Virus record (IMG/VR): IMGVR_UViG_3300031951_000003
Coordinates: 62,001-126,000 of that record
Reading direction: 5' to 3' (one strand)
DNA length: 64,000 nt
In this document: in pieces, positions 16,346 to 63,843 of the stretch
Numbering within the stretch: the first letter of the stretch is position 1
How the letters are laid out: each line of letters starts with the position of its first letter
Position numbers and translations under genes: made by a program
Notes under the pieces: generated by a model
What the model saw: only the letters and a program-made list of their open reading frames with translations
What the model was told of the DNA's origin: nothing
The model's database searches: none

Positions 16346-16749
16346 TGAATCTAACGAACACACTAAAAGGTTTACTCACGGAGATTGCTTCCATACAAAC
16401 AGTTCAAGATGCTGTCAATGGGAGAAAAGTTTGTGTGATATACTACGATGGTGACGAGCCAGGTGGTAGAGGACTTCGTGAAATAGAGCCCGTGGCTTTA
16501 GGTAAAAGTAAGGCAGGTAATTTAGTCATGAGAGGTTGGGATAGAGAAGGAGCATCTCACACAGGATATAAGGGTGAACAACCTTTACCTGGATGGAGAT
16601 TATTTAGACTTGATAAAATCCTATCTATGAAACCAACAGGTGAAGTTTACAATACTCCGAAACCAAATTATAATTTTAACGGAGATAAGAGTATGGTATC
16701 AGTAATTACGATTGCTAAGTTTGATAATACTCAACCTCAAACAACATAA
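16345..16749 (+). CDS. Stand-alone WYL-domain protein
   Basis: VIYY...REIEPVALG...GNLVMRGWD...WRLFRLDKI matches the WYL pattern. Confidence 0.75.
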   Translation: MNLTNTLKGLLTEIASIQTVQDAVNGRKVCVIYYDGDEPGGRGLREIEPVALGKSKAGNLVMRGWDREGASHTGYKGEQPLPGWRLFRLDKILSMKPTGEVYNTPKPNYNFNGDKSMVSVITIAKFDNTQPQTT

Positions 16750-17414: not shown

Positions 17415-18626
17415 ATGCCCAAAATTAACGTATTAGTTGTCCCATCAGATAGAACAGGTGTTGGCAAATTTAGGTCTGTAGACCCTCACATTTTTCTACA
17501 AAATTTATATCCTGAAGAGTTTCATGTCGATATTATATATGAAGTTCCGTATAACGATGATTCTTTTTGGAAGAAATACCAAATAGTTGCGTTCCATAGA
17601 AGTTTAGGTGCTGATTTCGAAAAAGCCTATGAATTGATTCCGAGATTGAAATCAATGGGAATTAAAACAATATGTGACATCGATGACTATTGGATGCCAG
17701 GTAAGGAACACCCAATCCACGATGTAATAAGATTCAACAAAATAAATGAGAAAATTACAAACAATCTCAAAGTCGCCGAATTTGTTACAACAACTACCTC
17801 AATATTTGCAGACGAAATAAAAAAATTGAACAAAAACGTTTTCGTTTTTCCAAACGCAATTAACCCAACAGAATCACAATTTAAGGAACCAACACCTGAA
17901 TCAGACAGATTACGAGTAGGTTGGCTTGGAGGTTCTTCTCATCTACACGACCTACAGTTGTTAGACCAATCATTCAGTAAGTTATCTAAACTTTCAGACA
18001 AACTACAGTTTGTAATTTGTGGATTTGACACAAGAGGAACAATAACTGAAATCAACCAACAAACAGGAGAACATAAAAAAAGAAACATATTACCACACGA
18101 AACTGTTTGGGCTAATTACGAAAAAATATTCACACAAGATTTCTCTATTGTATCCGAAGAATATAAAAATTATCTTTTGAAATACTCTCAAGAATCTTAC
18201 CCTGAAGAAAACAAAGAATCATATATCAGAGTCTGGACCAAACCAGTTCAGTCATATGCAAAAAACTATTCAAAGTTCGACATATCTTTAGCACCAATTA
18301 AAAATCATATGTTCAACAGAATGAAATCTCAACTTAAAGTAATTGAGGCTGGTTTTTACAAAAAAGCAATAATTGCTTCTAACTTAGGTCCTTATACAAT
18401 AGATTTAAAACACGCTTTAAAAAATGGAGAATTTACAGACGGTAATGCTCTTTTAGTTGAAGAAAATAGAAATCATTCAGATTGGGCTAAGTTTATAGAA
18501 AAATTAGAAAAAAATAGAAATTGGGTTACCGATTTAGGTGAAAGGTTGTATGAAACCGTGAAGGACAAATATGATTTGAACATAGTCACCAAACATAGAG
18601 CAGAGTTTTATAAATCTATATTATGA
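17415..18626 (+). CDS. GT-B (GT4-like) glycosyltransferase
   Basis: DIDDYW, VGWLGGSSH and DISLAPI...KSQLKVIEAG...IIASNLGPY are typical of phage GT4-like enzymes. Confidence 0.8.
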   Translation: MPKINVLVVPSDRTGVGKFRSVDPHIFLQNLYPEEFHVDIIYEVPYNDDSFWKKYQIVAFHRSLGADFEKAYELIPRLKSMGIKTICDIDDYWMPGKEHPIHDVIRFNKINEKITNNLKVAEFVTTTTSIFADEIKKLNKNVFVFPNAINPTESQFKEPTPESDRLRVGWLGGSSHLHDLQLLDQSFSKLSKLSDKLQFVICGFDTRGTITEINQQTGEHKKRNILPHETVWANYEKIFTQDFSIVSEEYKNYLLKYSQESYPEENKESYIRVWTKPVQSYAKNYSKFDISLAPIKNHMFNRMKSQLKVIEAGFYKKAIIASNLGPYTIDLKHALKNGEFTDGNALLVEENRNHSDWAKFIEKLEKNRNWVTDLGERLYETVKDKYDLNIVTKHRAEFYKSIL

Positions 18627-19324
18627 TAAACATTCCACTTAGTAAGATTCTTTTTTTAGATATCGAAACCGTTGGAGTCCAACCCAATTGGGATTCCTTG
18701 GTAAAAAACCAACCAGCGTTGTCTTTCCAATTTGAAAACTATTTTGATTGGTTTCAAAAAAGATTCCCAGAAGATGCGGACAAACCAATCGGTGATATGT
18801 TCGTCAATAGAGCGGCACTTGTCCCTGAGTTTGCAAGAATTGCATGTATAAGTGTTGCATTTGTGACCGAACAAGGTAACACACGAATGCAATCTTTCAG
18901 TGACCCTGATGAGAAAAAGATATTATTTGAAGTTCAGAAACTTTTACAAAAAGTTGGGGAGTTAGGTTTTTTTCTTTGTGGACATAATGTAAAAGGTTTT
19001 GACATTCCAATGTTGGCTAAAAGAATGATTATAAACGGTTTTCAACCACCAAAGATATTACCAGGACACGATACGAAACCTTGGGAAATAAAGGCTTTTG
19101 ACACTAAGGAATTTTGGCAATACGGTGGCTATGGCTCAATTGCATCCTTGGAACTTATGTGTGTATGTTTGGGTGTAGAATCTTCGAAGACCATGGAAAT
19201 TACAGGTAATAAGGTTCATGACGCTTTTTGGGTAAAAAAAGATATTGAAGGTATTGTAAAATATTGTGAGAAAGATGTGTCTGTATTAATTGATGTAATT
19301 AAAAAAATTCAAAAACTTAAATAA
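18623..19324 (+). CDS. PolB-like 3'-5' exonuclease (DEDD)
   Basis: FLDIETV, GHNVKGFDIP and YCEKDV motifs. Confidence 0.85.
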   Translation: MINIPLSKILFLDIETVGVQPNWDSLVKNQPALSFQFENYFDWFQKRFPEDADKPIGDMFVNRAALVPEFARIACISVAFVTEQGNTRMQSFSDPDEKKILFEVQKLLQKVGELGFFLCGHNVKGFDIPMLAKRMIINGFQPPKILPGHDTKPWEIKAFDTKEFWQYGGYGSIASLELMCVCLGVESSKTMEITGNKVHDAFWVKKDIEGIVKYCEKDVSVLIDVIKKIQKLK

Positions 19325-19325
19325 C

Positions 19326-19931
19326 ATGCAAAAAAAAGATGAAGAACTTCTGAAAGAAATCATGGAACAATTCCAAAGGATAAAGGATGAGGTAGGTATG
19401 GAACCTGATGAGAATTACCAACGTGAGTTGGAAGATTTATTTGGGATGTCCATGGAACAAATGAATGCCGACGCAACAATTGCATTACAGACACAAACGG
19501 TTGAGATTGAACTAATTCATGAGGACGCAATCTTTCCATCATATAACTACCCAACTGATTCAGGATTTGATTTATATTCTGTTGATGAAATGACCTTAGA
19601 ACCATTTGGAAGAGGTTTGGTTTCTACTGGTCTAAAGTTCAATTTCGAAGAGGGATATGAAATACAAATAAGAACCAAAAGTGGATTAGCAGTTAATCAA
19701 GGTTTAATGGTCTTAAACTCGCCAGGCACCGTAGACCAAGGATACACAGGGGAAATAAAAGTGCCTGTTTTTAATGCAAACCCAACCAAATTTACAATCT
19801 CAAAAAACATGAAAGTTGCTCAAGCAGTTCTTTGTCCTGTGAAAAACGGAAGATTTGTCAATTTAGTTCCTGTTGATGAGATTGGTCAAAAAGACAGGGG
19901 AGACAATGGTTTTGGAAGCACAGGAATTTAA
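19326..19931 (+). CDS. dut: Trimeric dUTPase with an acidic N-terminal extension
   Basis: SGFDL, RTKSG, GTVDQGYTGEIKV and RGDNGFGSTG motifs. Confidence 0.95.
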   Translation: MQKKDEELLKEIMEQFQRIKDEVGMEPDENYQRELEDLFGMSMEQMNADATIALQTQTVEIELIHEDAIFPSYNYPTDSGFDLYSVDEMTLEPFGRGLVSTGLKFNFEEGYEIQIRTKSGLAVNQGLMVLNSPGTVDQGYTGEIKVPVFNANPTKFTISKNMKVAQAVLCPVKNGRFVNLVPVDEIGQKDRGDNGFGSTGI

Positions 19932-19941
19932 ATTTTTGATA

Positions 19942-20112
19942 ATGGGAAAATACTACGAAAATCTGGACACTTTGATTGAATTAATCAAAAAACTAGAGAG
20001 GAAACATTTGCTCGCTGAGTTTATTTTGGATTGCATCCAAATATCCAAAATTGACCCCAACAAAACACCACACGAAATTATAAAAGAAGCAAAGAAAAAA
20101 AGATTAGGATAA
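19942..20112 (+). CDS. Small hypothetical protein (likely start MGKYY)
   Basis: Fills the gap between dut and the next glycosyltransferase. Confidence 0.5.
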   Translation: MGKYYENLDTLIELIKKLERKHLLAEFILDCIQISKIDPNKTPHEIIKEAKKKRLG

Positions 20113-21740
20113 TGATAACAGTTGGTTATTCAAGCAGAGAACACAAGCCTGAATTTATAGAATATTTAAAAAAGTCATCAGGATACAAAAAAATTAACGT
20201 TATTGAAAAAATAAATAACGGAGAAAAATCATTGGCTCAAGTTTATAACGAAATTCTGAAAGAATCAGAAACTGATATTATCGTATTTTGTCATGATGAC
20301 ATTTATTTCGATACAAACTCCTGGTATTCCAAAATCACTAAACATTTCGAAAAAACCGACTATGGTATTATCGGTATGGCAGGAACAACATCTATGCCCG
20401 CGAGTGGAAAATGGTGGGAGGATAGAAGAAAAATGATAGGAATTGTTAATCACGAAAGTGGAGGAAAAAAATGGGAATCAAAATACTCGGAATCAATTGG
20501 TAGTTCGGTGACTCCTGTGATTGTCTTGGACGGTGTTTTCATTGCTGTCAGTAAAAGTCGAATTAAGAAAAACTTCAATGAAGAATTCGAAGGATTTCAT
20601 TTCTATGATATCCCATTTTGTTTTGAAAACTTTATGGAAGGTGTTAAGATTGGAGTAATCACAAATATAAGAATAACTCACAAATCAATCGGTGCCACCA
20701 ATGACCAATGGGAAAAAAATAGACAGTTATTCGAAACCAAATACAGCCAAAACCTACCTGTCAAAATACCATATGATACTCAAAGAAAAATTAGAGTTTT
20801 ATTGAGTTGTTTATTTTTTAAAACTTTTACCGGTTCTGAATTATACGTTTATGAATTAGCACAAAAATTACAAAAATTGGGTTGTGATGTTACAATCATG
20901 TCTCAAATAGGTGGAGTGTTAACCGATATGGCAAAAAGACAAGGTATCAAGGTTATAAGTTTCGAACAAGCGCCTGGTTTTAAATTGGGTGACGGGAAAT
21001 GGGGATTTACAACGGAAAAAGGATTTCAACCTTCTACACCAAATATGATGTATAGAGTTACAGAGGCGCCATTCGATATTATTCATATGCAACACAAACC
21101 TGTTGCGGAAAGGATGATTCAATTCTATCCTGAGGTTGAAAAAGTTTATTCGATACATTCTGAAGTCATTGAATTAGAAAATCCAATCAAACATGAATCT
21201 ATAAAAAAATACATTGCAATCAGACCTGAAATAAAAAATTATATGATTGAAAATTTTCAGATTTCTGAAAATGAGATTGAAGTGATTTATAACCCTATAG
21301 ATGAAAACAAATTTGTTACTAAGAATGTAAAAAAAGAAAACGCGATATTGTTTGTTGGGACTATAGATTATCTTAGAAGAGAAACAATAATGGATTTGAT
21401 TGACTACACAAAAGAAAATGAAAAGGAACTTTGGATTGTTGGAGAGGATAAATCGAATTATCTTCCACAAATTCTTTTGAATTCACACGTCAAGCATTTC
21501 CCACCAACTTGGAATGTTGAAAGTTTTATAAATAGATGTTCAGAGACAGCCGGAATACAATTGGGTAGAACAACAATAGAGGGTTGGTTATGCCAGAAAC
21601 CAGGTTGGATATATAAGGTAGATTCGAATGGATTTATTATTTCTAAAGAACTTTATCAAGTTCCCGATGACGTTGAGAAATACCACAGTAGTAAAGTAAG
21701 TGAAAAAATAAAAAATATATACAGAGAAGTTTTATCATGA
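20112..21740 (+). CDS. Fused glycosyltransferase (GT2-like N-terminal plus GT4-like C-terminal)
   Basis: DIIVFCHDDIYF and FHFYDIPFC in the N-terminal half; TGSELYVYELA and ILFVGTIDYLR in the C-terminal half. Confidence 0.8.
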   Translation: MITVGYSSREHKPEFIEYLKKSSGYKKINVIEKINNGEKSLAQVYNEILKESETDIIVFCHDDIYFDTNSWYSKITKHFEKTDYGIIGMAGTTSMPASGKWWEDRRKMIGIVNHESGGKKWESKYSESIGSSVTPVIVLDGVFIAVSKSRIKKNFNEEFEGFHFYDIPFCFENFMEGVKIGVITNIRITHKSIGATNDQWEKNRQLFETKYSQNLPVKIPYDTQRKIRVLLSCLFFKTFTGSELYVYELAQKLQKLGCDVTIMSQIGGVLTDMAKRQGIKVISFEQAPGFKLGDGKWGFTTEKGFQPSTPNMMYRVTEAPFDIIHMQHKPVAERMIQFYPEVEKVYSIHSEVIELENPIKHESIKKYIAIRPEIKNYMIENFQISENEIEVIYNPIDENKFVTKNVKKENAILFVGTIDYLRRETIMDLIDYTKENEKELWIVGEDKSNYLPQILLNSHVKHFPPTWNVESFINRCSETAGIQLGRTTIEGWLCQKPGWIYKVDSNGFIISKELYQVPDDVEKYHSSKVSEKIKNIYREVLS

Positions 21741-22447
21741 TTATTCTAACCACCACTTTTAACTGCGAACAATTCATTGAAAGGTGTTTGTTGAGTATAA
21801 TGGGTCAAAAATTCAAAGATTTTATATGTTACATAACTGATGATTTATCTACGGATAAAACTAGAGAAATCATCAAAAGGACTATATCTGACGACCCAAG
21901 GTTTATTCTTATTGAAAATCATATCAAGTTTTATCAACCAGGCAACTACGACCAAATAATAAGATGGAGAGGTATTGAAGGGGAAGAAATCTGTGTTGAG
22001 ATTGATGGAGACGATTGGTTACCAAACTCACAAGTTCTGTCCAATATTGCAAAAGTCTATGAAGATAAAAATGTTTGGATGACAAGTGGTTCGTTCAAGT
22101 ATCATGACGGAAGACCAGGTTTTGCAAATCCACCTACGACAAATGTAGATGTAAGAAAACAAGTTTTCACCCTTTCTCACATGAGAACATGGAAATCTTG
22201 GCTTTGGAAAAAAATTGACGAAAAAGACTTGAGAGACGACAAAGGTAACTATTGGGATGTTGCTGGTGACCTATCTTTTATGTTTCCGATGTTTGAAATG
22301 TCAGGTATGGAACATTATAGATTTTTGACCGACATAAATTATATTTACAATGAATCTAACCCACTCAATGACCATAAAGTCAATATGAACAAGGTTATTG
22401 AAACGGTCAATAAAATCAGAAACAAAACCCCCTACACAAAACTATGA
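21737..22447 (+). CDS. GT2 family glycosyltransferase
   Basis: ILTTTFNCEQFIERCL, DDLSTDKT and VEIDGDDW. Confidence 0.85.
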   Translation: MIILTTTFNCEQFIERCLLSIMGQKFKDFICYITDDLSTDKTREIIKRTISDDPRFILIENHIKFYQPGNYDQIIRWRGIEGEEICVEIDGDDWLPNSQVLSNIAKVYEDKNVWMTSGSFKYHDGRPGFANPPTTNVDVRKQVFTLSHMRTWKSWLWKKIDEKDLRDDKGNYWDVAGDLSFMFPMFEMSGMEHYRFLTDINYIYNESNPLNDHKVNMNKVIETVNKIRNKTPYTKL

Positions 22448-23091
22448 GTTTTGATTCAAGTATAGAAAACATTATTTTGGAAATTAACCAAACAAAAAAA
22501 ATAGACAACATCCTCCACATCGGAGCGTGTTTAGGTGAAGAAGTAACTTTTTACAACAGACTCAATCCAAAAAAAGTTTACTGGTTCGAACCAAACCCAA
22601 AACTATTGAGCCAATTAGAAAAAAACCTTGCAGGATATAATTTTGAAAACTCATTATTTCCCTATGCGGTAAGCAATAAGAAAGGAGTTGCTAGTTTCAA
22701 CATAATTGAAAACACATCGAAAACAAACCCAGGATGTTCATCCCTTCAGGATTTGAAAATCCACTTGGAACTTTATCAAGATATACAGAAAGTTGATACT
22801 TGCCAAGTTAATACAATCAACATAGATGAATTCATTTCTGAAAATAATTTAGAGTCTAATTTCGATTTAGTCAGTCTTGATACACAAGGACATGATTTTG
22901 AAATACTTAATTCGAGTGAATTAATTTTTAATGCGAATATAATAGTAATTGAGACGGCTAAAGTAGAATTATACGAAGGTCAGAAAATTGACACAGAAAT
23001 AGATTCATTAATGGAGTCCAAGGGATTTCATAAAAAATACTATCACCAATTTCATAGTGTTTGGGGTGATACTCTATATGTAAAAAATTAA
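22444..23091 (+). CDS. FkbM family SAM-dependent methyltransferase
   Basis: LHIGACLGEE, WFEPNP and LDTQGHDFEIL. Confidence 0.85.
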   Translation: MSFDSSIENIILEINQTKKIDNILHIGACLGEEVTFYNRLNPKKVYWFEPNPKLLSQLEKNLAGYNFENSLFPYAVSNKKGVASFNIIENTSKTNPGCSSLQDLKIHLELYQDIQKVDTCQVNTINIDEFISENNLESNFDLVSLDTQGHDFEILNSSELIFNANIIVIETAKVELYEGQKIDTEIDSLMESKGFHKKYYHQFHSVWGDTLYVKN

Positions 23092-23092
23092 A

Positions 23093-23923
23093 GTGATGTC
23101 GAATTTAATATCAGCACACCTTATGGGTGGATTAGGAAATCAATTGTTTGAGGCTGCACACGCTTTAGCTCAAGGCTGGAAACACAACAGAGAGGTAAAA
23201 TTCTTTCCTGATTCTTGGACACCAGGTCAAGGGAGAAATGCTAAAAATTACATCGATAACGTATTCAGAAACTTGGAATTTTCAGATAAGATTGAAGGTT
23301 TTACACACGTATATGAAGGACCTTTCGAGTATTCTGAAGTGAATCCACTGGAAACCAATACCTCATTCTATGGATACTATCAAAGTTCCAAAAATTGGTT
23401 TGGATACGATGAAAAAATAAGAGATATTTTTCAACCTAACCCTGAATTGGTCGAAGAAATGAAATTAAAATATCCTCAATTATCCCAACCAAATACTTTA
23501 TCTCTCCACGTCAGAAGAAGTGAATATCTTCAATTCCCTGAGATTCACCCAACAATTAGTTTAGAGTATATTCAAGAAGCTCTAAAAGTAATTGGGGAAT
23601 ACTCAACAGTATTTGTTTTCAGTGATGACCACGATTTTGTTAAACAAAATTTAAATTTTCCAAGTGTAGTTTATGTAAATGAGTCTGAGGATTGGAGAGA
23701 ATTATACTTAATGGGACTCTGTCAAAATCACATAATATCAAACTCCACTTTTTCATGGTGGGGTGTATTTTTGAACAAAAACTTAAATAAAAAAATTGTC
23801 GCCCCATCTCGTTGGTTCGGTCCTAAAGGTCCTAATGCAAAGGATATCTACGAATCTTACTGGCACACTATAAATTGTGATTGGGTTGAGGGTGGAAGAT
23901 TAATTCCTCTAAAAAATGATTAA
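23093..23923 (+). CDS. GT11 alpha-1,2-fucosyltransferase-like protein
   Basis: GGLGNQLF, LHVRRSEY and HIISNSTFSWW signature motifs. Confidence 0.9.
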   Translation: MMSNLISAHLMGGLGNQLFEAAHALAQGWKHNREVKFFPDSWTPGQGRNAKNYIDNVFRNLEFSDKIEGFTHVYEGPFEYSEVNPLETNTSFYGYYQSSKNWFGYDEKIRDIFQPNPELVEEMKLKYPQLSQPNTLSLHVRRSEYLQFPEIHPTISLEYIQEALKVIGEYSTVFVFSDDHDFVKQNLNFPSVVYVNESEDWRELYLMGLCQNHIISNSTFSWWGVFLNKNLNKKIVAPSRWFGPKGPNAKDIYESYWHTINCDWVEGGRLIPLKND

Positions 23924-24548
23924 TACAAGTCCAAACAGCGAATCTTGTCAAATATCTGACGTAAAAAAAATTGTTACATCTCGAAACTTCAAATTGGATG
24001 GTGATGTAATTGAATTTGGAACTTTCACAGGTGGGAGCACCAAAGTCCTTTCAGGTCTTTTCCCCGATAAAACCATCTTCACAATAGACCATTTTCAAGG
24101 GTTAGAAAAAACAAACAAAAACGTTCCTAAAGATAGTGATTGGATTGAGAGAGCATTTGCTTTGGACAATCCTTTGTATAAACATATTTCTAGTGTTCCA
24201 AAATCTATAGAAGAACTTAAAAATAGATTCAAAGGTCATAATAATATCGAAATGATTATATCGGATATCCATGACTTAACTGAACCTTCGGATTATAATA
24301 TCTCAAAAATTTCCATATGTAACCTTGATGTTGACATTTATGAACCAGCAGTTTCTTCATTAGAGTTTTTAACAAAATGCGAATGGTCCGAGATATTCAT
24401 CAGGTTTGACGATTGGCACGGAGGTGAATCCGAATACGACCAACATGAACGTTTAGCATTCGTAGAGTGGATTGAAAAATATAAATATGATTTCCAAATA
24501 ACTCACGGTGGTTATATAGGTGGGGTCCACGTAAAAAGAGCAAGATGA
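23916..24548 (+). CDS. TylF/MycF-like sugar O-methyltransferase (copy 1)
   Basis: VIEFGTFTGGS, DHFQGL, LDVDIYE and FDDW. Confidence 0.75.
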   Translation: MINTSPNSESCQISDVKKIVTSRNFKLDGDVIEFGTFTGGSTKVLSGLFPDKTIFTIDHFQGLEKTNKNVPKDSDWIERAFALDNPLYKHISSVPKSIEELKNRFKGHNNIEMIISDIHDLTEPSDYNISKISICNLDVDIYEPAVSSLEFLTKCEWSEIFIRFDDWHGGESEYDQHERLAFVEWIEKYKYDFQITHGGYIGGVHVKRAR

Positions 24549-25153
24549 ACAACTCAAACCTTTCATGTAAATTAGAAATTTTAAAAGAGATATCGAAAAA
24601 ATATTCTCTAATTGGTGATGTTTTGGAGTTTGGAACTTGCACTTGTCAAAGTGCAATCCAACTTGCCACAATGTTTCCTGACAAAACAGTATTCACAATT
24701 GACCATTTTCAAGGACTTGGAAAAAGTTCCAAACCATTACCATCCTCAAGTGATTGGAGGGAAGGTTCTTTTGCGTTGGGTGCATGGAACGCAAAAGGTT
24801 GCGAGTTTCCAAAAACAATAGATGAGGCCCTGCAAAAACTATCAAGTAAGCCAAATATAAAACCAATTATCTCAGATATTCACAAATTAACACATCCATC
24901 AGATTACGGAATCGGAAAAATTTCTATATGTAATGTTGATGTAGACATATATGAACCAACGGTATCATCACTCGAATTTTTGTTAAAATGTGAATGGTCA
25001 GAGGTTTTCATAAGATTTGATGATTGGCATGGTGGGAATTCTGAATATGACCATCACGAAAGGCAGGCCTTCAACGAATGGATAAATAAACATAATCTCC
25101 AATTTGAATTAACCCATAATGGGACTTATGGTGGAGCATATATTAAAAGATAA
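24545..25153 (+). CDS. TylF/MycF-like sugar O-methyltransferase (copy 2)
   Basis: VLEFGTCTCQS, DHFQGL, VDVDIYE and FDDW; close paralogue of the upstream gene. Confidence 0.75.
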   Translation: MNNSNLSCKLEILKEISKKYSLIGDVLEFGTCTCQSAIQLATMFPDKTVFTIDHFQGLGKSSKPLPSSSDWREGSFALGAWNAKGCEFPKTIDEALQKLSSKPNIKPIISDIHKLTHPSDYGIGKISICNVDVDIYEPTVSSLEFLLKCEWSEVFIRFDDWHGGNSEYDHHERQAFNEWINKHNLQFELTHNGTYGGAYIKR

Positions 25154-25156
25154 AAA

Positions 25157-25990
25157 ATGGAAAAAAAATTAATCAGGAAAGTATCAGATTGGTGGGGTGA
25201 ATATGATTGTTCATCAAACCGCAACATGCCAAAGTATATACAATGGCTATCTAGAGAAACTGAAACACCACACGAAGTTAGTGTATATGTTGATAACTAC
25301 ATTAAAGATTGGGGATTCAATGACCCATCAAGAGAAAAAATTGGATGGTTACTCGAATCACCACAGATGAATGAGCACACAATCAAATATCTCTTAGATA
25401 ATATTGACAAAACAAGGGAACATTATAAGTGGATATTCACTTGTATGGATAGTCTTGTCGAAATGGGTGCACCATTTGTTTACAATATATCAAATGCGGT
25501 TCCTTGGATTTGGGAAAGAAATAGAATGATACACCCAAAAACTAAACTTGTATCCATGATTGCATCCAATAAAGGATGGTTGAGGGGTCACCAAAACAGA
25601 CTACAATGGGTTGAGAGATTGAAAGATAAAGTGGACCTATTCGGTTCAGGCAGACCCCACCAAATAAACGATAAAGAGGATGGATTGAGAGATTATATGT
25701 TTTCAGTCTCAATTGAAAATGATAATTCTGACACATACTTCACAGAGAAACTTACAGATAATTTTGTTATGGGAACTGTCCCTGTATATTATGGTTCGAG
25801 GAAGGTCGTTGAGAAATACTTCGACCCAACAGGAGTAATATTCTTGGAGGATGACCCCGACTTGTCAAGTTTAACTGTAGAAAAATATCAGTCCATGATG
25901 CCCGCAATTGAAAGAAATTTCAAGAAAGCGTTGGAATTACCACTAGCAGAAGATTACATGTGGGAAAACTATCTTAAAAATTTATTCTAA
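25157..25990 (+). CDS. GT10 (alpha-1,3-fucosyltransferase)-like protein
   Basis: DYMFSVSIEN...YFTEKL...GTVPVYYG is the GT10 C-terminal motif. Confidence 0.75.
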   Translation: MEKKLIRKVSDWWGEYDCSSNRNMPKYIQWLSRETETPHEVSVYVDNYIKDWGFNDPSREKIGWLLESPQMNEHTIKYLLDNIDKTREHYKWIFTCMDSLVEMGAPFVYNISNAVPWIWERNRMIHPKTKLVSMIASNKGWLRGHQNRLQWVERLKDKVDLFGSGRPHQINDKEDGLRDYMFSVSIENDNSDTYFTEKLTDNFVMGTVPVYYGSRKVVEKYFDPTGVIFLEDDPDLSSLTVEKYQSMMPAIERNFKKALELPLAEDYMWENYLKNLF

Positions 25991-26805
25991 TGAAATATCT
26001 TGTTTTAGGCTCCGAAGGACAAATCGGAATGGAATTATGTAAATTCCTCAGAAACAAAGGGGAAACAGTAATAGAATTTGATAACGCTAAAATACCCAGT
26101 CAAGATTTAAGAATACCAAATATCATTGATGATTTGGTGATGGAATCTGATTTTGTGATGTTCTTGGCTTTTGATGTTGGTGGTTCAAGATATTTGAAAA
26201 AATATCAACACACATATGAATTTATTGAAAATAATACAAAGCTAACACTATACACTTTTGAAAGTTTGAAAAAACATAACAAACCTTTTATATTTGCATC
26301 ATCACAAATGGCAAATATGTCATATTCACCATATGGAGTTTGTAAAAGTTTAGGTGAGATTTTCTCAACTGCACTGAATGGAGTCACAGTCAAGTTTTGG
26401 AACGTGTATGGACCTGAACATGATTTGGAAAAATCACACGTTGTGACTGATTTCATATTAAAGGCTAAAAAAGGTCAAATTACAATGATGACCGATGGAA
26501 CAGAAGAAAGACAGTTTTTACATGCTGAGGATTGTTCAAATTGTTTGTATATTCTTTCACAAAAATATAATGAGATTGATAGGTCAAAAAACCTACACAT
26601 AACAAATTTTGAATGGAATACAATTTTAGAAGTTGCAAATATTATTCGTGAGACAATTCCTTGTGAAGTCATTCCTTCAACCGAAAAAGATTCTGTTCAA
26701 CTTAATAAAAAGAACGAACCCGACCCTTACATATTGAATTTTTGGAAACCTGAGATATCCTTGAAAGAGGGTATCAATAAAATTATAAATGAAATGACAA
26801 ATTAG
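25990..26805 (+). CDS. NAD-dependent epimerase/dehydratase (SDR)
   Basis: GSEGQIG Rossmann motif, ASS, YGVCK, FWNVYGP. Confidence 0.85.
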   Translation: MKYLVLGSEGQIGMELCKFLRNKGETVIEFDNAKIPSQDLRIPNIIDDLVMESDFVMFLAFDVGGSRYLKKYQHTYEFIENNTKLTLYTFESLKKHNKPFIFASSQMANMSYSPYGVCKSLGEIFSTALNGVTVKFWNVYGPEHDLEKSHVVTDFILKAKKGQITMMTDGTEERQFLHAEDCSNCLYILSQKYNEIDRSKNLHITNFEWNTILEVANIIRETIPCEVIPSTEKDSVQLNKKNEPDPYILNFWKPEISLKEGINKIINEMTN

Positions 26806-26806
26806 T

Positions 26807-27907
26807 ATGAAACAAAAAAAAGTAGTTGTTTTAGGTGGTGGAGGATTCATAGGGGGGCATTTGGCTAAAAGATTAAAAGAAGAAGGATGTCACGTTAGAA
26901 TATGTGATATAAAAAAACATGAATACTTTTTCCAAGATGAAATATGTGATGAATTTATTTTGGGTGATTTGACTGACCCAAAGGTTGTGGAATTGGTAAT
27001 CGAAGAAGGTGTTGACGAAATTTATCAGTTAGCTGCAGATATGGGGGGTGCTTTGTATATTTTCACAGGAGAACACGATGCAGATGTAATGTATAACTCA
27101 GCAATGATTAATCTCAATGTTGCAAGAGAATGTGTTAAGAAAAAAGTAGGAAAGGTTTTTTACTCTTCTTCTGCTTGTATGTATCCCGAGCACAATCAAT
27201 TAGACCCCAACAATCCAAATTGTGAAGAATCTTCAGCATATCCTGCAAATCCAGATTCGGAATACGGATGGGAAAAGTTATTCTCAGAGAGAGTATTCCT
27301 TTCATTTCATAGAAACTATGGACTCAATGTTAGAATAGCAAGATTTCATAATATTTTTGGACCTCAAGGAACTTGGAAAGGGGGTAGAGAAAAATCACCC
27401 GCAGCGATGTGTAGAAAAGCTGCAGAATCAAAAGACGGTGATGAGATAGAGGTTTGGGGAGAGGGTAATCAAACCCGTTCATTTCTTTATGTAGACGAAT
27501 GTGTAGAAGCTGTGTTAAGATTAATGAAGTCTGACTTTACCGGACCTGTCAACATAGGAAGTGAAGAAATGGTTTCAATCAACGAATTAGCAATTCTAGC
27601 AATCAATATTTCAGGTAAGAAATTAAAAGTCAAAAATATTGCAGGTCGAGAGTTTGAAAAAAAATACGGTTTCAAGTGTCCGTTGGGTGTTAAGGGAAGA
27701 AACTCAGACAACAAGTTATATAGAGAAAAAATTGGATGGGAAGTTAGTCAACCTTTAGAAGTTGGTATAAGAAAAACATATCAATGGATTAAATCTCAGG
27801 TTGATGACTATGAGACACAAACCCCTTGGATATATGAAACACCTGACAATGGTAAAACAGTTTATAGAAGAGAAATAAACAATCCAATTAGAAAAAAAAT
27901 TAAATAA
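26807..27907 (+). CDS. GDP-mannose 3,5-epimerase-like nucleotide-sugar epimerase
   Basis: GGGGFIGGH, LAADMGG, YSSSACMYP, YGWEK and REKSPAAMCRK are characteristic of the GME clade. Confidence 0.8.
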   Translation: MKQKKVVVLGGGGFIGGHLAKRLKEEGCHVRICDIKKHEYFFQDEICDEFILGDLTDPKVVELVIEEGVDEIYQLAADMGGALYIFTGEHDADVMYNSAMINLNVARECVKKKVGKVFYSSSACMYPEHNQLDPNNPNCEESSAYPANPDSEYGWEKLFSERVFLSFHRNYGLNVRIARFHNIFGPQGTWKGGREKSPAAMCRKAAESKDGDEIEVWGEGNQTRSFLYVDECVEAVLRLMKSDFTGPVNIGSEEMVSINELAILAINISGKKLKVKNIAGREFEKKYGFKCPLGVKGRNSDNKLYREKIGWEVSQPLEVGIRKTYQWIKSQVDDYETQTPWIYETPDNGKTVYRREINNPIRKKIK

Positions 27908-27908
27908 A

Positions 27909-28295
27909 ATGATAAATGTCCCTGTTAGTGTCGGAGAGTTAATTGATAAACTTTCCATCCTTCAAGTAAAAAAGACAAAAGTAAAAAATACAGAAAAACT
28001 TGAATACATCAAAAAGGAATTCGAGTTACTTTACAACTTGTCTTCAGAATATTTGAACGATATGACAATTGAAAATTTATACCACGATTTGGTAAACACA
28101 AACTCAAATCTGTGGGAAATTGAGGATAGACTCAGAGTTTTGGAACTTGAAAGTAAATTCGAGGGTGAGTTTATAGATTTGGCTAGAAAAGTGTATATCA
28201 CAAACGACAGAAGATTCGAATTGAAAAACGAAATCAATTCAATCACTTCATCTGAAATAAGAGAAGTAAAAGAATATGTGAACTACAAAAGATAA
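27909..28295 (+). CDS. DUF6165-like protein
   Basis: VPVSVGELIDKLSILQVK...LWEIED...VYITNDRR...K. Confidence 0.75.
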   Translation: MINVPVSVGELIDKLSILQVKKTKVKNTEKLEYIKKEFELLYNLSSEYLNDMTIENLYHDLVNTNSNLWEIEDRLRVLELESKFEGEFIDLARKVYITNDRRFELKNEINSITSSEIREVKEYVNYKR

Positions 28296-29911: not shown

Positions 29912-30961
29912 ATGCAGGCACCAGTAAAAGAAAAATTAGAAATTTCAATCAAAAATTTGGAAGACAAAAAAGCCAGAATTTATTTTTTGGTTCAAGATAC
30001 CAAAAACAACGCTAAAGCTTCTGTTAGATTTATCTATCAAGTTGCAAAAACCCTTTTGGATAATGGATTCAATCCAATCATTTTACATGAAAAGAAAGAT
30101 TACTTAGGTGTAAATTGGATGGGTGAGGAATACATGAAGATTCCTCATAAAACAATTGAAGGTGAGAATTTAGAAATTTCTCCCGAAGACTTTTTGGTAA
30201 TCCCCGAGATATTTGGATACGTTATGGAGCAAGTTAAACAATTGCCATGTGCTAAAATTGTTATAACTCAACAATATGCTCACATGTTAGAAACTCTCAA
30301 TCCAGGTCAATCGTGGTCACAGTTTGGATTTTACAAATGTATAACTACCAATTTCAAACAAAAAGAATATATCGAGAAGGTAATGAGACAATCCTCAATT
30401 GATGTTTTGAAACCTTATATAAATGATAAGTTCCAACCAAAAAATTTACCACCAATGCCGATTATTGGTATTCACACCAAAGAACAATCTGATGCGGTGA
30501 ACATAATCAAAACTTTTTATCTCAGGTTTCCACAATATAGATGGTTTACCTTCCGAGACTTAAGAGGGTTGTCGGAAACAGAATTTGCAAACTCTTTGAA
30601 AGAATGTTTTGTCAGCGTTTGGATTGACGATAAGAGTGGATTTGGAACATTTCCTTTAGAATCCATGAAATGTGGTGTTCCTTGTATTGGCAAAATTCCA
30701 GATTTGATGCCCGATTGGATGAACGAAGACAATGGGATATGGATTACAGACCAAACATTATTCCCTGATGTATTAGCAGATTTTGTTCAAAATTGGTTGG
30801 AGGATAACATCAAACCTGAACTTTACGAACAATTTCAAAAAACAGCAGAAACTTTCTCAAATAAACAAGAGTTTGAAGAGAACGCAGTTGAACTATTTCA
30901 ATCGTATCTAACCACAAGAGCAAACTCATTTAAAGAACAAATGTCAAAAACAGAAAACTAA
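29912..30961 (+). CDS. GT-B (GT4-like) glycosyltransferase
   Basis: DFLVIPEIFG; FVSVWID..SGFGTFPLESMKCGVPCIG C-terminal motif. Confidence 0.75.
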   Translation: MQAPVKEKLEISIKNLEDKKARIYFLVQDTKNNAKASVRFIYQVAKTLLDNGFNPIILHEKKDYLGVNWMGEEYMKIPHKTIEGENLEISPEDFLVIPEIFGYVMEQVKQLPCAKIVITQQYAHMLETLNPGQSWSQFGFYKCITTNFKQKEYIEKVMRQSSIDVLKPYINDKFQPKNLPPMPIIGIHTKEQSDAVNIIKTFYLRFPQYRWFTFRDLRGLSETEFANSLKECFVSVWIDDKSGFGTFPLESMKCGVPCIGKIPDLMPDWMNEDNGIWITDQTLFPDVLADFVQNWLEDNIKPELYEQFQKTAETFSNKQEFEENAVELFQSYLTTRANSFKEQMSKTEN

Positions 30962-30962
30962 T

Positions 30963-31769
30963 ATGGAAAACAAATTTTCAGTATCTGTAATATTACCTAT
31001 CAAATCTTCTAAAGCAAAAGACTTTGAAGAGTATTTTAATAAAGCAATCAATTCAATCAAAAATCAGTCTGTAGAGCTAGAGGAAATTCTAATCGTTCAT
31101 TCAATTGAAGAATCACTTCAAGAATTTTTGAAAAGTTATAATTTCGAAAATCTGAATGTAAAATTATTAGAGTGGAGTCAAAAACCTAATTACTGTTCTC
31201 AAGTCAACTTCGGAATTAAAAATGCGAAAGCAACTTGGATTTCTCTTTTTGAATTTGATGATGAATACTCAAATATTTGGTTCAAAAATGTAAAGAAATA
31301 CGCTGAATCATATCCTGATGTTCAGATGTTCTTACCAGTAGTTGTCGAAGTGGACGAAAAAGGGACCTTCGCTGGTTTCACAAATGAAGCAACGTTTGCG
31401 GCAAACTTTACACAAGAAATGGGATTCTTGACAAATGACACACTTCAAGATTATCAGAACTTCCAAACCGCAGGGTCAGTATTCAAAAAATCTTTGATTG
31501 ATGATTTTGGTGGTTTCAAACCCTCAATCAAACTCACTTTTATTTATGAGTTCCTTTTGAGACTTACGTATAATTCAGTTTCTATTATGACTATACCCAA
31601 ACTTGGTTACAAACACGTTAACCTTAGAGAGGGTTCAATATTTTGGAATTACAAAAATGGTGATTCGAAAATGTTAGAAGATGAAGTTAAGTTTTGGCTA
31701 CAGACAGCCAAGAAAGAATATTTCTTTACTGACGACAGAGTCATAAAATATGAATCACCAAATGCGTAA
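30963..31769 (+). CDS. GT2 family glycosyltransferase
   Basis: VSVILPI, VNFGIKNA and FEFDDEY. Confidence 0.8.
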   Translation: MENKFSVSVILPIKSSKAKDFEEYFNKAINSIKNQSVELEEILIVHSIEESLQEFLKSYNFENLNVKLLEWSQKPNYCSQVNFGIKNAKATWISLFEFDDEYSNIWFKNVKKYAESYPDVQMFLPVVVEVDEKGTFAGFTNEATFAANFTQEMGFLTNDTLQDYQNFQTAGSVFKKSLIDDFGGFKPSIKLTFIYEFLLRLTYNSVSIMTIPKLGYKHVNLREGSIFWNYKNGDSKMLEDEVKFWLQTAKKEYFFTDDRVIKYESPNA

Positions 31770-63834: not shown

Positions 63835-63843
63835 CAGCAGATT

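What the first reader, a model, noticed from the sequence alone, without database searches (positions are those of the whole stretch)
23093..27907. GDP-mannose 3,5-epimerase-like enzyme paired with GT11 and GT10 fucosyltransferase folds: possible L-galactose glycan
Seen: GME-clade motifs at 26807-27907 next to GT11 and GT10-like genes; no Gmd or Fcl (GDP-L-fucose synthesis) in the window. Known: GME converts GDP-D-mannose to GDP-L-galactose/L-gulose, and L-galactose is the 6-hydroxy form of L-fucose that fucosyltransferases can accept. Inference: the phage may cap its glycans with L-galactose or L-gulose, a rare sugar that host glycosidases may handle poorly.
Basis: partly seen in the sequence, partly recalled or inferred. 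Interest (0 to 1): 0.6.

Follow-up and report, generated by a model that had tools for sequence, protein, structure and literature searches.

The report
Phage GDP-L-sugar glycan gene module
[quoted passage not shown] The enzyme itself has already been annotated in phages, and the sugar has never been measured.

Summary
ORF 26807-27907 is a true GDP-mannose 3,5-epimerase (GME) homologue: 330 bits to Arabidopsis GME against 94 bits for the next family, with all eight diagnostic residues kept. ORF 23093-23923 is GT11 and ORF 25157-25990 is GT10-like. The complete 321-kb genome has no Gmd, Fcl or sugar nucleotidyltransferase.

- two TylF-like methyltransferases (23916-25153);
- a second, 271-aa NAD-type SDR (25990-26805) between GT10 and GME.

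GT11-GT10-SDR is contiguous, with GME within 3.7 kb, in 31 of 32 related viral contigs. GME also lies beside a GT10-like gene in six Kyanoviridae genomes that lack Gmd and Fcl. The one isolate with the GT10-like gene but no GME (S-SRM01) carries Gmd and Fcl instead. This either/or pattern supports the GME product (GDP-L-galactose or GDP-L-gulose, possibly 4-epimerised) as the donor for the fucosyltransferase-fold enzymes.

This is inference from gene context. Host GDP-fucose is not excluded and the acceptor is unknown. GME was already annotated in cyanophage S-SCSM1, so this is a new member of a known kind, of moderate interest.

The parts
26807..27907 (+). GDP-mannose 3,5-epimerase (GME/GM35E) homologue, 366 aa. 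Predicted catalytic set: S122, C124, Y153, K157, N182, K196, R224, R298. It has an 11-aa insertion (about residues 281-291) and a 30-aa C-terminal tail relative to plant GME.
   Evidence: PDB 2c59 at 2e-97 (330 bits) against 94 bits for the next family. Residues were mapped from the alignment and the sequence. All eight are invariant in 150 distinct viral and bacterial homologues, while an Fcl outgroup shows His and Lys at the two diagnostic sites.
25990..26805 (+). Short extended SDR ('SDR271', 271 aa). It has the glycine motif GSEGQIG, D31 after beta2 (NAD-type), S104/S105 and Y115xxxK119. It has no Cys, His or Glu acid/base residue. Predicted to be an NDP-sugar C4-epimerase-like enzyme of unknown substrate.
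   Evidence: Pfam Epimerase 2.8e-24. Fcl model 33.8 bits against a cut-off of 500. Sequence. AF2 pLDDT 86. Foldseek finds only generic NDP-sugar SDRs. With the first 224 aa as query, the best PDB sequence matches are the archaeal GDP-sugar 4-epimerases 3icp/3aw9/8rdi and the UDP-GlcA 4-epimerase 6zl6; with the full-length protein or its profile, UDP-xylose synthase ranks first through the C-terminal half. Always adjacent to GT10 in relatives.
25157..25990 (+). GT10-like (alpha-1,3/4-fucosyltransferase fold) glycosyltransferase, 277 aa. It carries the alpha-1,3-FucT motif (F..IEN....Y.TEK) and the conserved Arg in the NRLQ region.
   Evidence: Pfam PF00852 at 8.8e-13. PDB matches to AtFucTA 9s6a (1.3e-7), H. 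pylori FucT 2nzw (6.6e-7) and human FUT9 (7.7e-6), with the motif aligned. It is the only GT10 in the genome.
24545..25153 (+). Paralogue of the TylF-like methyltransferase (202 aa), a tandem duplicate.
   Evidence: No Pfam hit. It shares long near-identical stretches with ORF 23916-24548. It is 40% identical to S-SCSM2R ORF239, which sits between the SDR and GT10 in that phage.
23916..24548 (+). TylF-family (macrocin/sugar O-methyltransferase-like) methyltransferase, 210 aa.
   Evidence: Pfam PF05711 at 6.1e-6, 26.1 bits against a cut-off of 23. Present in 15 of 32 GT10-centred relatives.
23093..23923 (+). GT11 (alpha-1,2-fucosyltransferase family) glycosyltransferase, likely starting at 23096. 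Motifs: GGLGNQLF, HVRRSEY (a variant of HxRRGDY) and SNSTFSWWG.
   Evidence: Pfam PF01531 at 3e-20. 33% identity over 247 aa to the S-SCSM1 alpha-1,2-fucosyltransferase. It is the only GT11 in the genome. Motifs read.
22444..23091 (+). FkbM-family methyltransferase, 215 aa.
   Evidence: Pfam PF05050 at 1.3e-19. Present upstream of GT11 in 23 of 32 relatives.
27909..28295 (+). DUF6165/DUF4254-like small protein that frequently accompanies GME. Role unknown.
   Evidence: Pfam PF19662 at 5.2e-10. Found near GME in 24 of 80 and 19 of 32 related loci.
17415..22447 (+). Upstream part of the same + strand glycan island. It holds a GT1/GT4-like gene (17415-18626), a GT2+GT4 fusion (20112-21740) and a GT2 gene (21737-22447). 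An exonuclease gene and a dUTPase gene are interspersed.
   Evidence: Pfam. The GT2_GT4 and GT2 genes are conserved upstream in 28 of 32 relatives.
29912..31769 (+). Downstream glycosyltransferases of the island, after phoH: a GT1-like gene (29912-30961) and a GT2 gene (30963-31769).
   Evidence: Pfam.

Best explanation
The interval is the core of a phage-encoded glycan-building island. Shown: the 366-aa protein has every sequence hallmark of a GDP-mannose 3,5-epimerase. Inferred: it converts host GDP-D-mannose into GDP-beta-L-galactose and GDP-beta-L-gulose. The phage has no ManC, Gmd or Fcl, so GDP-mannose must come from the host. The single GT10-like enzyme, and probably the single GT11 enzyme, are inverting GT-B enzymes built to bind GDP-beta-L-fucose. 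They are inferred to use the GME product, which is the 6-hydroxy analogue of GDP-fucose, as donor and to lay down alpha-L-galactosyl or alpha-L-gulosyl residues. The 271-aa SDR wedged between GT10 and GME is inferred to be an NAD+-retaining C4-epimerase-type enzyme. It may widen or shift the GDP-L-hexose pool, for example GDP-L-Gal to GDP-L-Glc, as the archaeal GDP-sugar 4-epimerases do. The two TylF-like methyltransferases and the FkbM methyltransferase are inferred to O-methylate the L-sugar residues. The GT2, GT4 and GT1-like enzymes of the island would build the rest of the oligosaccharide. All of these enzymes are predicted to be soluble, and the phage encodes no flippase, polymerase or initiating transferase. 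Assembly would therefore be cytoplasmic, either on phage (virion) proteins or on host lipid-linked precursors. Which of these is the acceptor remains open.
For: GME identity:
- 330 bits to solved plant GME against 94 bits for the next family.
- S122, C124, Y153, K157, N182, K196, R224 and R298 correspond to At S143, C145, Y174, K178, N203, K217, R243 and R306, the set listed as diagnostic in PMC8787198.
- All eight are invariant in 150 distinct homologues, while Fcl shows the expected His and Lys.

No alternative GDP-sugar route in the phage:
- There is no Gmd, Fcl or NTP_transferase in the complete genome.
- There is only one GT11 and one GT10 in the genome, both in this island.

Linkage:
- GT11-GT10-SDR271 is contiguous, with GME no more than 3.7 kb away, in 31 of 32 GT10-centred IMG/VR loci. 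This holds despite insertions, losses and rearrangements of the methyltransferase genes. Only 1 of the 32 has Gmd/Fcl.
- The GME-(MT)-SDR-(MT)-GT10 set recurs at 40-59% identity in the distant Kyanoviridae S-SSM7 and S-SCSM2R.
- GME directly abuts the GT10-like gene in S-SM2, S-T4 and Sf-CH8, without the SDR.
- S-SSM7, S-SCSM2R, S-SM2, S-T4, Sf-CH8 and Sf-FS3 lack Gmd and Fcl genome-wide.
- S-SRM01 has the GT10-like gene and no GME. It carries Gmd (540 bits) and Fcl (473 bits) 5-7 kb upstream instead.

Chemistry from the literature:
- Alpha-1,3-, alpha-1,2- and alpha-1,6-fucosyltransferases accept GDP-L-Gal (the review PMC8787198, citing Stangier 1997, Duffels 2000, Ohashi 2017 and 2019).

SDR271:
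- D31 indicates NAD+ binding and there is no acid/base residue.
- Over the first 224 aa its nearest solved relatives are 4-epimerases, including the GDP-sugar 4-epimerase subgroup (PMC12171764); the full-length protein and its profile instead rank UDP-xylose synthase first.

Methyltransferases:
- Pfam hits.
- Relatives insert RMNT_CmcI-like (rhamnosyl O-methyltransferase) and FkbM genes between the SDR and GME.

Soluble machinery:
- No protein has more than 4 predicted TM segments among the 378 predicted proteins.
Against: - No biochemical or glycan data exist for any of these phage proteins. Donor specificity cannot be read from sequence.
- The host is unknown, and many bacteria make GDP-L-fucose, so the GT10 and GT11 enzymes could simply use host GDP-Fuc.
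- A close relative (G001, 317 kb) and S-SCSM1 carry Gmd and Fcl together with GME. The two routes are therefore not strictly exclusive.
- The 31 linked loci are close relatives (67-100% identity) and are not independent observations. The number of independent lineages is about seven.
- In the S-B05-type cyanophages the SDR271 homologue lies 11 kb from GME, so its tie to GME is not universal.
- Bacterial GME loci showed no similar GT10 or GT11 genes within 8 kb.
- The role of SDR271 rests on weak similarity (E 1e-6 to 1e-11) and on the absence of certain residues.
Confidence: 0.5

Rival explanations
1. The GT10 and GT11 enzymes are ordinary fucosyltransferases that draw on host-made GDP-L-fucose. 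The GME product goes to another transferase of the island, or GME mainly drains the host GDP-mannose pool.
For: Both proteins keep the canonical fucosyltransferase motifs. Relatives exist in which Gmd and Fcl sit in the same cluster (G001/L008, L044, S-SCSM1). Many bacteria, including Bacteroidota that hold the closest GME genes, have Gmd/Fcl next to GME.
Against: Next to the GT10-like gene, phage genomes carry either GME or Gmd/Fcl: seven genomes have GME only, one has Gmd/Fcl only and one has both. This suggests the phage supplies the donor itself. GME abuts the GT10-like gene directly in S-SM2, S-T4 and Sf-CH8. No other GT family in the island is known to take GDP-beta-L-hexoses (general knowledge of CAZy families).
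Confidence: 0.2
2. The true donor of the GT10-like enzyme is not GDP-L-galactose. It is a further-converted GDP-L-hexose made by SDR271 from the GME product, for example GDP-L-glucose from GDP-L-Gal, or the 4-epimer of GDP-L-gulose.
For: SDR271 is immediately downstream of GT10 in all 31 informative relatives. It sits between GME and GT10 in S-SSM7, S-SCSM2R and Sf-FS3. It has NAD-type and 4-epimerase-like features. Among its nearest solved relatives is the P. horikoshii enzyme, which is reported to act on GDP-L-Gal and GDP-L-Fuc (PMC12171764).
Against: S-SM2, S-T4 and Sf-CH5/8 have GME plus GT10-like without any SDR271 homologue, so the SDR is dispensable for the GME-GT10 pairing. P-SSM2 and P-SSM5 have the SDR without GME. 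Similarity to the GDP-4-epimerase subgroup is weak and no better than to UDP-GlcA 4-epimerase or UXS.
Confidence: 0.15
3. The island remodels the host cell envelope (LPS, capsule or S-layer glycan) during infection, for example to block superinfection, rather than glycosylating virions. This concerns the acceptor and is compatible with any of the donor hypotheses.
For: This is the reading given for the homologous cyanophage islands in PMC9602691 and PMC12801897. DUF4254/DUF6165-like proteins and GT2/GT4 enzymes are typical of envelope glycan loci.
Against: The phage encodes no flippase, polymerase, ligase or initiating phosphoglycosyltransferase-like polytopic membrane protein. The island lies next to the head gene module: major capsid protein at 41335-43146, portal at 47615-49453. 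Virion glycosylation by phage GTs is documented in mycobacteriophages (Freeman 2023, cited in PMC12801897).
Confidence: 0.35
4. The GME homologue has a narrowed or shifted activity. It might act only as a C5 epimerase giving GDP-L-gulose, or use another GDP-sugar such as GDP-glucose or a GDP-heptose. In that case L-galactose is not made.
For: There is an 11-residue insertion and a 30-residue C-terminal tail relative to plant GME. The enzyme is only about 55% identical to characterised enzymes.
Against: All catalytic and substrate-contacting residues named for GME are invariant. The bacterial M. fumariolicum enzyme, of similar divergence, is reported to be a bona fide GME (Gevaert 2019, cited).
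Confidence: 0.08

Closest known systems
GDP-mannose 3,5-epimerase (GM35E/GME) of Arabidopsis (PDB 2c59) and Methylacidiphilum fumariolicum
   Same: Extended-SDR fold and about 55% identity over 332 residues. The catalytic triad, Cys/Lys acid-base pair, acidifying Arg, diphosphate Arg and orange-wall Asn are identical.
   Different: It is encoded by a phage. It has an 11-aa insertion and a C-terminal tail. It sits in a glycosyltransferase and methyltransferase island rather than an ascorbate pathway. Its activity has not been measured.
Cell-wall/LPS gene island of cyanophage S-SCSM1 (PMC9602691), and those of S-SSM7, S-SCSM2R, S-SM2, S-T4 and Sf-FS3
   Same: A phage island with GME (52-59% identical), GT11-type fucosyltransferases, GT2 enzymes and methyltransferases. 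S-SSM7, S-SCSM2R and Sf-FS3 also share the SDR271 and GT10-like genes.
   Different: S-SCSM1 also has Gmd and Fcl, which this phage lacks. This phage is a 321-kb freshwater phage with a distant gp23-like capsid and is not a member of Kyanoviridae. Its GME is closest to Bacteroidota genes, at 82-84% identity.
GT10 alpha-1,3/4-fucosyltransferases (H. pylori FucT 2nzw, Arabidopsis FucTA, human FUT9)
   Same: The C-terminal GDP-binding domain and the alpha-1,3-FucT motif are aligned, and the N-terminal WWG region also aligns with the H. pylori enzyme.
   Different: It is much shorter (277 aa) and the similarity is low (E 1e-7). Its genomic partner is GME rather than Gmd/Fcl. Donor and acceptor are unknown.
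Archaeal GDP-sugar 4-epimerase subgroup (PhGal4E_1, PDB 8rdg/8rdh; P. calidifontis 3aw9/3icp)
   Same: With the first 224 aa as query these are the best-scoring solved relatives of SDR271. SDR271 shares the NAD-type Rossmann fold, the S...YxxxK triad, the conserved Asn in the N-V-x-G-P motif and a nearby invariant His (PMC12171764).
   Different: It is about 20% identical and 40-55 residues shorter. The Ser-to-Tyr spacing is unusually short, at 10 residues. The His is offset by one position. Membership is not established.
Chlorovirus PBCV-1 GDP-sugar enzymes (Gmd/GMER) and virus-encoded capsid glycosylation; mycobacteriophage virion glycosylation
   Same: A virus encodes both nucleotide-sugar-modifying enzymes and soluble glycosyltransferases and methyltransferases. 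In those systems they build unusual, partly O-methylated glycans in the cytoplasm (own knowledge; Freeman 2023 as cited).
   Different: Those systems use the Gmd/GMER route (L-fucose, D-rhamnose) or host sugars. GME-derived L-sugars have not been shown in them. Virion glycosylation is untested here.

Membership tests
GDP-mannose 3,5-epimerase (GM35E, EC 5.1.3.18) | Extended-SDR glycine motif and the [ST]xnYx3K triad (At S143, Y174, K178) | tested here: met
   GGGGFIG at residues 10-16; S122, Y153 and K157 align with the At residues. Invariant in 150 homologues.
GDP-mannose 3,5-epimerase (GM35E, EC 5.1.3.18) | Cys/Lys acid-base pair (At C145, K217). A Lys at the base position separates GME from GMER/Fcl, which has His. 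| tested here: met
   C124 and K196 are present. The Fcl outgroup has His at that column. Criterion taken from PMC8787198.
GDP-mannose 3,5-epimerase (GM35E, EC 5.1.3.18) | Cys-acidifying Arg (At R306; Lys in GMER), diphosphate Arg (R243), orange-wall Asn (N203) | tested here: met
   R298, R224 and N182 are conserved. Fcl has Lys at the R298 column.
GDP-mannose 3,5-epimerase (GM35E, EC 5.1.3.18) | Closer to characterised GMEs than to any other NDP-sugar SDR family | tested here: met
   330 and 314 bits to two plant GME structures, against 94 bits (UXS) and 75 bits (Fcl). Below cut-off for every NCBIfam equivalog tested, and NCBIfam returned no GME model.
GDP-mannose 3,5-epimerase (GM35E, EC 5.1.3.18) | [quoted passage not shown] | not testable with these tools
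   Needs an enzyme assay.
GT10 (alpha-1,3/4-fucosyltransferases) | Pfam Glyco_transf_10 C-terminal domain above the gathering score | tested here: met
   48.7 bits against a cut-off of 23.9.
GT10 (alpha-1,3/4-fucosyltransferases) | Alpha-1,3-FucT motif FxLxFENxxxxxYxTEK and the upstream GDP-contacting Arg | tested here: met
   The motif (FSVSIEN....YFTEK) aligns with H. pylori FucT and AtFucTA. The Arg of the NRLQ region aligns with the Arg of FRLQ in AtFucTA.
GT10 (alpha-1,3/4-fucosyltransferases) | N-terminal catalytic base Glu (E95 in H. pylori FucT) | tested here: inconclusive
   The N-terminal WWG region aligns weakly, and an E-S-P motif at residues 67-69 resembles the Hp GENESP region. 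The numbering is recalled from memory and no alignment covers this stretch.
GT10 (alpha-1,3/4-fucosyltransferases) | Uses GDP-beta-L-fucose as donor | not testable with these tools
   Gene context suggests a GME-derived donor instead.
GT11 (alpha-1,2-fucosyltransferases) | Pfam Glyco_transf_11 above the gathering score, plus the family motifs (N-terminal GGLGNQ, HxRRGDY, STFSWW) | tested here: met
   73.1 bits against a cut-off of 23.9, although only profile positions 118-297 match. GGLGNQLF and SNSTFSWWG are present. Motif I is the variant HVRRSEY, with Gly changed to Ser and Asp to Glu. 33% identity to the S-SCSM1 alpha-1,2-FucT from residue 11.
GDP-L-fucose synthase (Fcl/GMER), considered for the 271-aa SDR | Equivalog score, the Ser-x-Cys acid and the His base | tested here: not met
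   33.8 bits against a cut-off of 500. Gln or Met occupies the Cys position. D31 indicates NAD rather than NADPH binding. There is no Gmd to supply the 4-keto-6-deoxy substrate.
GDP-mannose 4,6-dehydratase (Gmd) anywhere in the genome | TIGR01472 at or above 415 bits | tested here: not met
   The only hit is the GME gene, at 30 bits. The positive controls S-SCSM1 (569 bits), G001 (416 bits) and S-SRM01 (540 bits) were detected by the same search.
GDP-sugar 4-epimerase subgroup (PhGal4E_1-like), considered for the 271-aa SDR | Sequence grouping with the subgroup, and the key residues P80, R83, N174, H182 and the guanine-stacking Trp | tested here: inconclusive
   Subgroup members are the top PDB hits for the first 224 aa, but with E of only 4e-6 to 4e-5 and tied with UDP-GlcA 4-epimerase; UXS ranks first for the full-length protein. 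The Asn is conserved and the His is offset by one position. P80, R83 and the Trp could not be mapped.
TylF/MycF-type sugar O-methyltransferases | Pfam TylF above the gathering score | tested here: met
   26.1 bits against a cut-off of 23 for ORF 23916-24548, which is marginal. The paralogue 24545-25153 is below detection by Pfam.

The most novel reading that the evidence does not exclude
A widespread lineage of roughly 320-kb freshwater phages, and several marine cyanophages, replace the fucose pathway with a GME-based pathway. They would build O-methylated alpha-L-galactose/L-gulose residues on their virions or on the infected cell surface. With the extra 4-epimerase-like SDR, the sugars could even be L-glucose-type. 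These sugars are almost unknown in bacterial or viral glycans and would be poorly recognised by host and environmental glycosidases and lectins.
Probability: 0.3. Interest if true: 0.7.

Novelty: new member of a known kind. Interest (0 to 1): 0.45.

Why it matters
If the inference holds, phages would be a natural source of GDP-L-galactose/L-gulose pathways coupled to compact (about 275-aa) fucosyltransferase-fold enzymes that prefer 6-hydroxy L-sugars. Such enzymes would be useful for making rare L-glycosides. It would also add a new sugar chemistry to virus-encoded glycosylation.

The either/or pattern of GME versus Gmd/Fcl next to the GT10-like gene gives a clean, testable prediction about donor choice.

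On the annotation side, dozens of phage genes labelled 'UDP-glucose 4-epimerase' or 'nucleotide-sugar epimerase' are in fact GME orthologues.

The enzyme family and the idea that fucosyltransferases accept GDP-L-Gal are both established, and GME has already been named in one cyanophage genome. The advance is therefore incremental until a glycan is measured.

Tried and rejected
- **Gmd/Fcl elsewhere in the genome:** searched, none found.
- **Phage-encoded GDP-mannose synthesis:** no NTP_transferase.
- **The 271-aa SDR as a cryptic Fcl or Gmd:** rejected. It scores 34 bits against a cut-off of 500, has no Cys/His or Asp/Glu acid-base residues, has an NAD-type Asp, and lacks a 4-keto-6-deoxy substrate source.
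- **Fold search to pin down the SDR's specificity:** uninformative. At least 500 NDP-sugar SDR chains matched with similar scores, including GalE, UXS, Rmd, GMER and heptose reductases.
- **wcaG RNA motif,** as annotated upstream of the homologous cyanophage clusters: not found in this window. Rfam at gathering threshold gave only a tmRNA.
- **Cyanophage identity of the window:** not supported. The capsid protein is only distantly gp23-like, with best matches to Microcystis phage Mel-JY01, Flavobacterium phages and uncultured huge phages. The DNA occurs in freshwater and lake metagenomes. The GME gene groups with Bacteroidota. The host remains unknown.
- **Similar GT10, GT11 or SDR genes beside bacterial GME genes:** GT10 and GT11 were absent within 8 kb in 80 genomes. 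The SDR was adjacent in only 3 MAG contigs.
- **PDB sequence search for the GT11:** no solved relative found.
- **DNA glycosylation as the target:** considered because dUTPase, exonuclease and PhoH genes are interspersed. Nothing supports fucosyltransferase-fold enzymes acting on DNA.

Full report
**Setting**

The window is bases 62001-126000 of a 321,139-bp virus record with direct terminal repeats, rated 100% complete. Near-identical DNA occurs in freshwater and lake metagenomes from at least 14 studies. The capsid, portal and terminase genes lie at 41-51 kb on the minus strand. The capsid protein is only distantly gp23-like. Its best matches are Microcystis phage Mel-JY01, Flavobacterium phages and uncultured huge phages. 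This is therefore a freshwater jumbo phage of unknown host, not a known cyanophage.

The finding lies inside a long + strand gene array at about 14-38 kb. That array holds at least eight glycosyltransferase domains: GT1/GT4-like, a GT2+GT4 fusion, three GT2, GT11, GT10 and a further GT1-like. It also holds several methyltransferases, interspersed with dUTPase, an exonuclease and PhoH.

**The observation**

ORF 26807-27907 (366 aa) matches the solved Arabidopsis GDP-mannose 3,5-epimerase at E 2e-97 (330 bits) and another plant GME at 1.5e-92. The next families score far lower: UDP-xylose synthase 94 bits and GDP-fucose synthase 75 bits.

The GME review lists the residues that separate GME from GalE and from GMER/Fcl:
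- the S/Y/K triad;
- the Cys145/Lys217 acid-base pair (GMER has His at the base position);
- the Cys-acidifying Arg306 (GMER has Lys);
- Arg243 and Asn203.

From the alignment and the sequence these correspond to S122, Y153, K157, C124, K196, R298, R224 and N182 of the phage protein. I extracted 150 distinct homologues from 80 viral and 80 bacterial loci and three cyanophages. All eight positions are invariant in them. A cyanophage Fcl used as outgroup shows His and Lys at the two diagnostic columns, exactly as the review describes.

ORF 23093-23923 is GT11 (Pfam 3e-20). It carries the GGLGNQLF, HVRRSEY and SNSTFSWWG motifs. ORF 25157-25990 is GT10-like (Pfam 8.8e-13). Its alpha-1,3-fucosyltransferase motif and the upstream Arg align with H. 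pylori FucT, Arabidopsis FucTA and human FUT9. These are the only GT11 and GT10 genes in the genome.

The gmd and Fcl models find nothing in the whole genome except weak hits on GME and its SDR neighbour. There is no sugar nucleotidyltransferase.

Between GT11 and GT10 lie two tandem paralogues of a TylF-type sugar O-methyltransferase (23916-24548 and 24545-25153). Upstream of GT11 is an FkbM methyltransferase.

Directly between GT10 and GME lies a second SDR of 271 aa (25990-26805):
- It has a glycine motif, an Asp at the end of beta2 (typical of enzymes that keep NAD+ bound) and a Ser...YxxxK triad with an unusually short 10-residue spacing.
- It has no Cys, His or Glu that could serve 3,5-epimerisation, dehydration or decarboxylation.
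- It scores 34 bits on the Fcl model against a cut-off of 500, so it is not a hidden fucose synthase.
- The AlphaFold model is confident (pLDDT 86), but Foldseek returns the whole NDP-sugar SDR superfamily without discrimination.
- By sequence, the full-length protein and its profile rank UDP-xylose synthase first, through the C-terminal half. With the first 224 residues as query, the nearest solved proteins are 4-epimerases: the P. calidifontis and P. horikoshii members of the recently described GDP-sugar 4-epimerase subgroup, and a UDP-GlcA 4-epimerase.

I therefore read SDR271 as a C4-epimerase-type enzyme, possibly acting on GDP-L-hexoses. Confidence in this reading is low.

**Gene linkage**

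At least 599 IMG/VR contigs encode GME relatives. In 80 of them, with 10-kb flanks, GME usually sits just upstream of phoH (57 of 80). It lies at the edge of a variable glycosyltransferase island. GT11-like or GT10-like genes are common there, and true Gmd/Fcl genes are rare.

Searching from the GT10 side gave 32 loci. In 31 of them GT11, GT10 and SDR271 are contiguous and GME lies within 3.7 kb. The 32nd is cut at a contig end. Only one locus carries Gmd and Fcl, inserted between SDR271 and GME. Methyltransferase genes come and go around these four genes. Where relatives have insertions between SDR271 and GME, the inserted genes include a rhamnosyl-O-methyltransferase/CmcI-like gene and an FkbM gene. 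These loci are close relatives, so they count as one lineage.

Independent support comes from cultured Kyanoviridae:
- S-SSM7 and S-SCSM2R carry GME, a methyltransferase-like gene, an SDR271 homologue and a GT10-like gene in a row, at 57-59%, 51% and 41-44% identity respectively. S-SCSM2R also has a TylF-like gene. Sf-FS3 has the same layout.
- In S-SM2, S-T4 and Sf-CH8, GME abuts the GT10-like gene directly, with no SDR.
- None of these six genomes contains Gmd or Fcl.
- S-SRM01 has the GT10-like gene and no GME; its best match to the GME query is its own Fcl, at 28% identity. It carries Gmd (540 bits) and Fcl (473 bits) 5-7 kb upstream instead.
- A 317-kb relative of the window's phage, and S-SCSM1, carry both routes.

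Across about seven lineages, the GT10-like gene is therefore always accompanied by a phage-encoded route to a GDP-beta-L-hexose, and most often that route is GME alone.

**Mechanism**

Shown:
- the identities of the protein families;
- the catalytic residues of GME;
- the absence of a fucose route in the phage;
- the gene linkage.

From the literature: alpha-1,3-, alpha-1,2- and alpha-1,6-fucosyltransferases accept GDP-L-galactose in vitro and in fucose-deficient plants (PMC8787198).

Inferred:
- GME converts host GDP-mannose to GDP-L-Gal/GDP-L-Gul.
- The GT10-like enzyme, and probably the GT11 enzyme, transfer that sugar with inversion to give alpha-L-linked residues.
- SDR271 may interconvert C4 epimers of the donor.
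- The TylF-like and FkbM methyltransferases O-methylate the product.

A hydropathy scan of 378 predicted proteins finds nothing with more than four TM segments. The phage therefore brings no flippase, polymerase or initiating transferase, and assembly is cytoplasmic. The acceptor could be virion proteins or host lipid-linked precursors. The island adjoins the head genes, which fits virion proteins. The cyanophage papers assume host lipid-linked precursors. The acceptor question is open.

**Limits**

- There is no chemistry. Host GDP-fucose remains a live alternative.
- The co-occurrence counts are few once relatedness is taken into account.
- The SDR's role rests on weak similarity.
- SDR271 homologues are not always next to GME. 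In S-B05-type phages they lie 11 kb apart, and P-SSM2 and P-SSM5 have the SDR without GME.
- Bacterial GME genes, mostly from Bacteroidota, are up to 84% identical to the phage gene and form the sister group of its viral clade. They lack similar GT10 or GT11 neighbours and often sit beside Fcl-like genes.

**Novelty**

GME next to fucosyltransferases was annotated in cyanophage S-SCSM1 in 2022 (PMC9602691), and JGI already labels many of the viral homologues as GDP-D-mannose 3',5'-epimerase. New here are:
- recognition that a fixed GT11-GT10-SDR-GME (plus methyltransferase) module exists in a widespread freshwater jumbo-phage lineage;
- recognition that the GME-GT10 pairing spans distant phage families;
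- the observation that it substitutes for, rather than accompanies, the Gmd/Fcl route in most genomes.

This makes the L-galactose/L-gulose hypothesis specific and testable, but it remains a hypothesis. I rate it a new member of a known kind, of moderate interest.

No alternative genetic code was used. No reads were laid. 

Noticed in passing
window 63442-63837 (+): A full-length tmRNA gene (Rfam RF00023, 76 bits; ARAGORN tag peptide AEEATVVA*) is encoded by the phage. It could help in guessing the host.
   Followed up: no
window 26807-27907; loci L087-L096, L106, L154: The phage GME is 80-84% identical to GME genes of Chryseobacterium and Kaistella. Its viral clade (support 0.995) is sister to them in the tree, while cyanophage GMEs are only 52-59% identical. 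This hints at gene exchange with, or a host among, freshwater Bacteroidota.
   Followed up: partly
L008 / G001 (317,259-bp relative), about G001:84047-88383: A close relative has Fcl-like (231 bits) and Gmd (416 bits) genes inserted exactly between SDR271 and GME. This gives a block of four consecutive GDP-sugar-type enzymes.
   Followed up: partly
window 23916-25153: There is a tandem duplication of the TylF-like methyltransferase. The second copy has diverged enough to escape Pfam. Only 8 of 32 relatives keep both copies.
   Followed up: partly
phage records listed (S-SSM7, S-SM2, S-CAM9, S-T4, S-B05, P-TIM68, Bellamy and others): About 25 isolate cyanophages carry GME orthologues annotated as 'UDP-glucose 4-epimerase', 'nucleotide-sugar epimerase' or 'NAD-dependent dehydratase'. 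These look like systematic under-annotations.
   Followed up: partly
window 41335-43146 (-): The major capsid protein is 603 aa, and only residues about 288-580 match the gp23-type head-protein profile. It therefore has an N-terminal extension of roughly 280 aa with no recognised family.
   Followed up: no
window 7804-9822 (-) and 10788-14717 (-): Two large proteins (672 and 1309 aa) share repeats matching phrog_15511 (unknown function), just upstream of the glycan island on the opposite strand.
   Followed up: no
window 16345-16749 (+): A small WYL-domain protein (Pfam 1.3e-4, just above cut-off) sits at the head of the + strand array. It could be a regulator.
   Followed up: no
L126, L127 (Marinimicrobia MAG contigs), L130 (Kaiserbacteria MAG contig): An SDR271 homologue (55-60% identity) is directly adjacent to GME on short MAG contigs. 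These may be binned viral fragments or genuine cellular copies of the pair.
   Followed up: no
L095, L116, L117, L136, L151, L152, L159, L164, L165 (bacterial loci): In several bacteria an Fcl-like gene (47-57% identical to the S-SCSM1 Fcl) lies beside GME with no Gmd within 8 kb. This recurrent pairing is unexplained.
   Followed up: no
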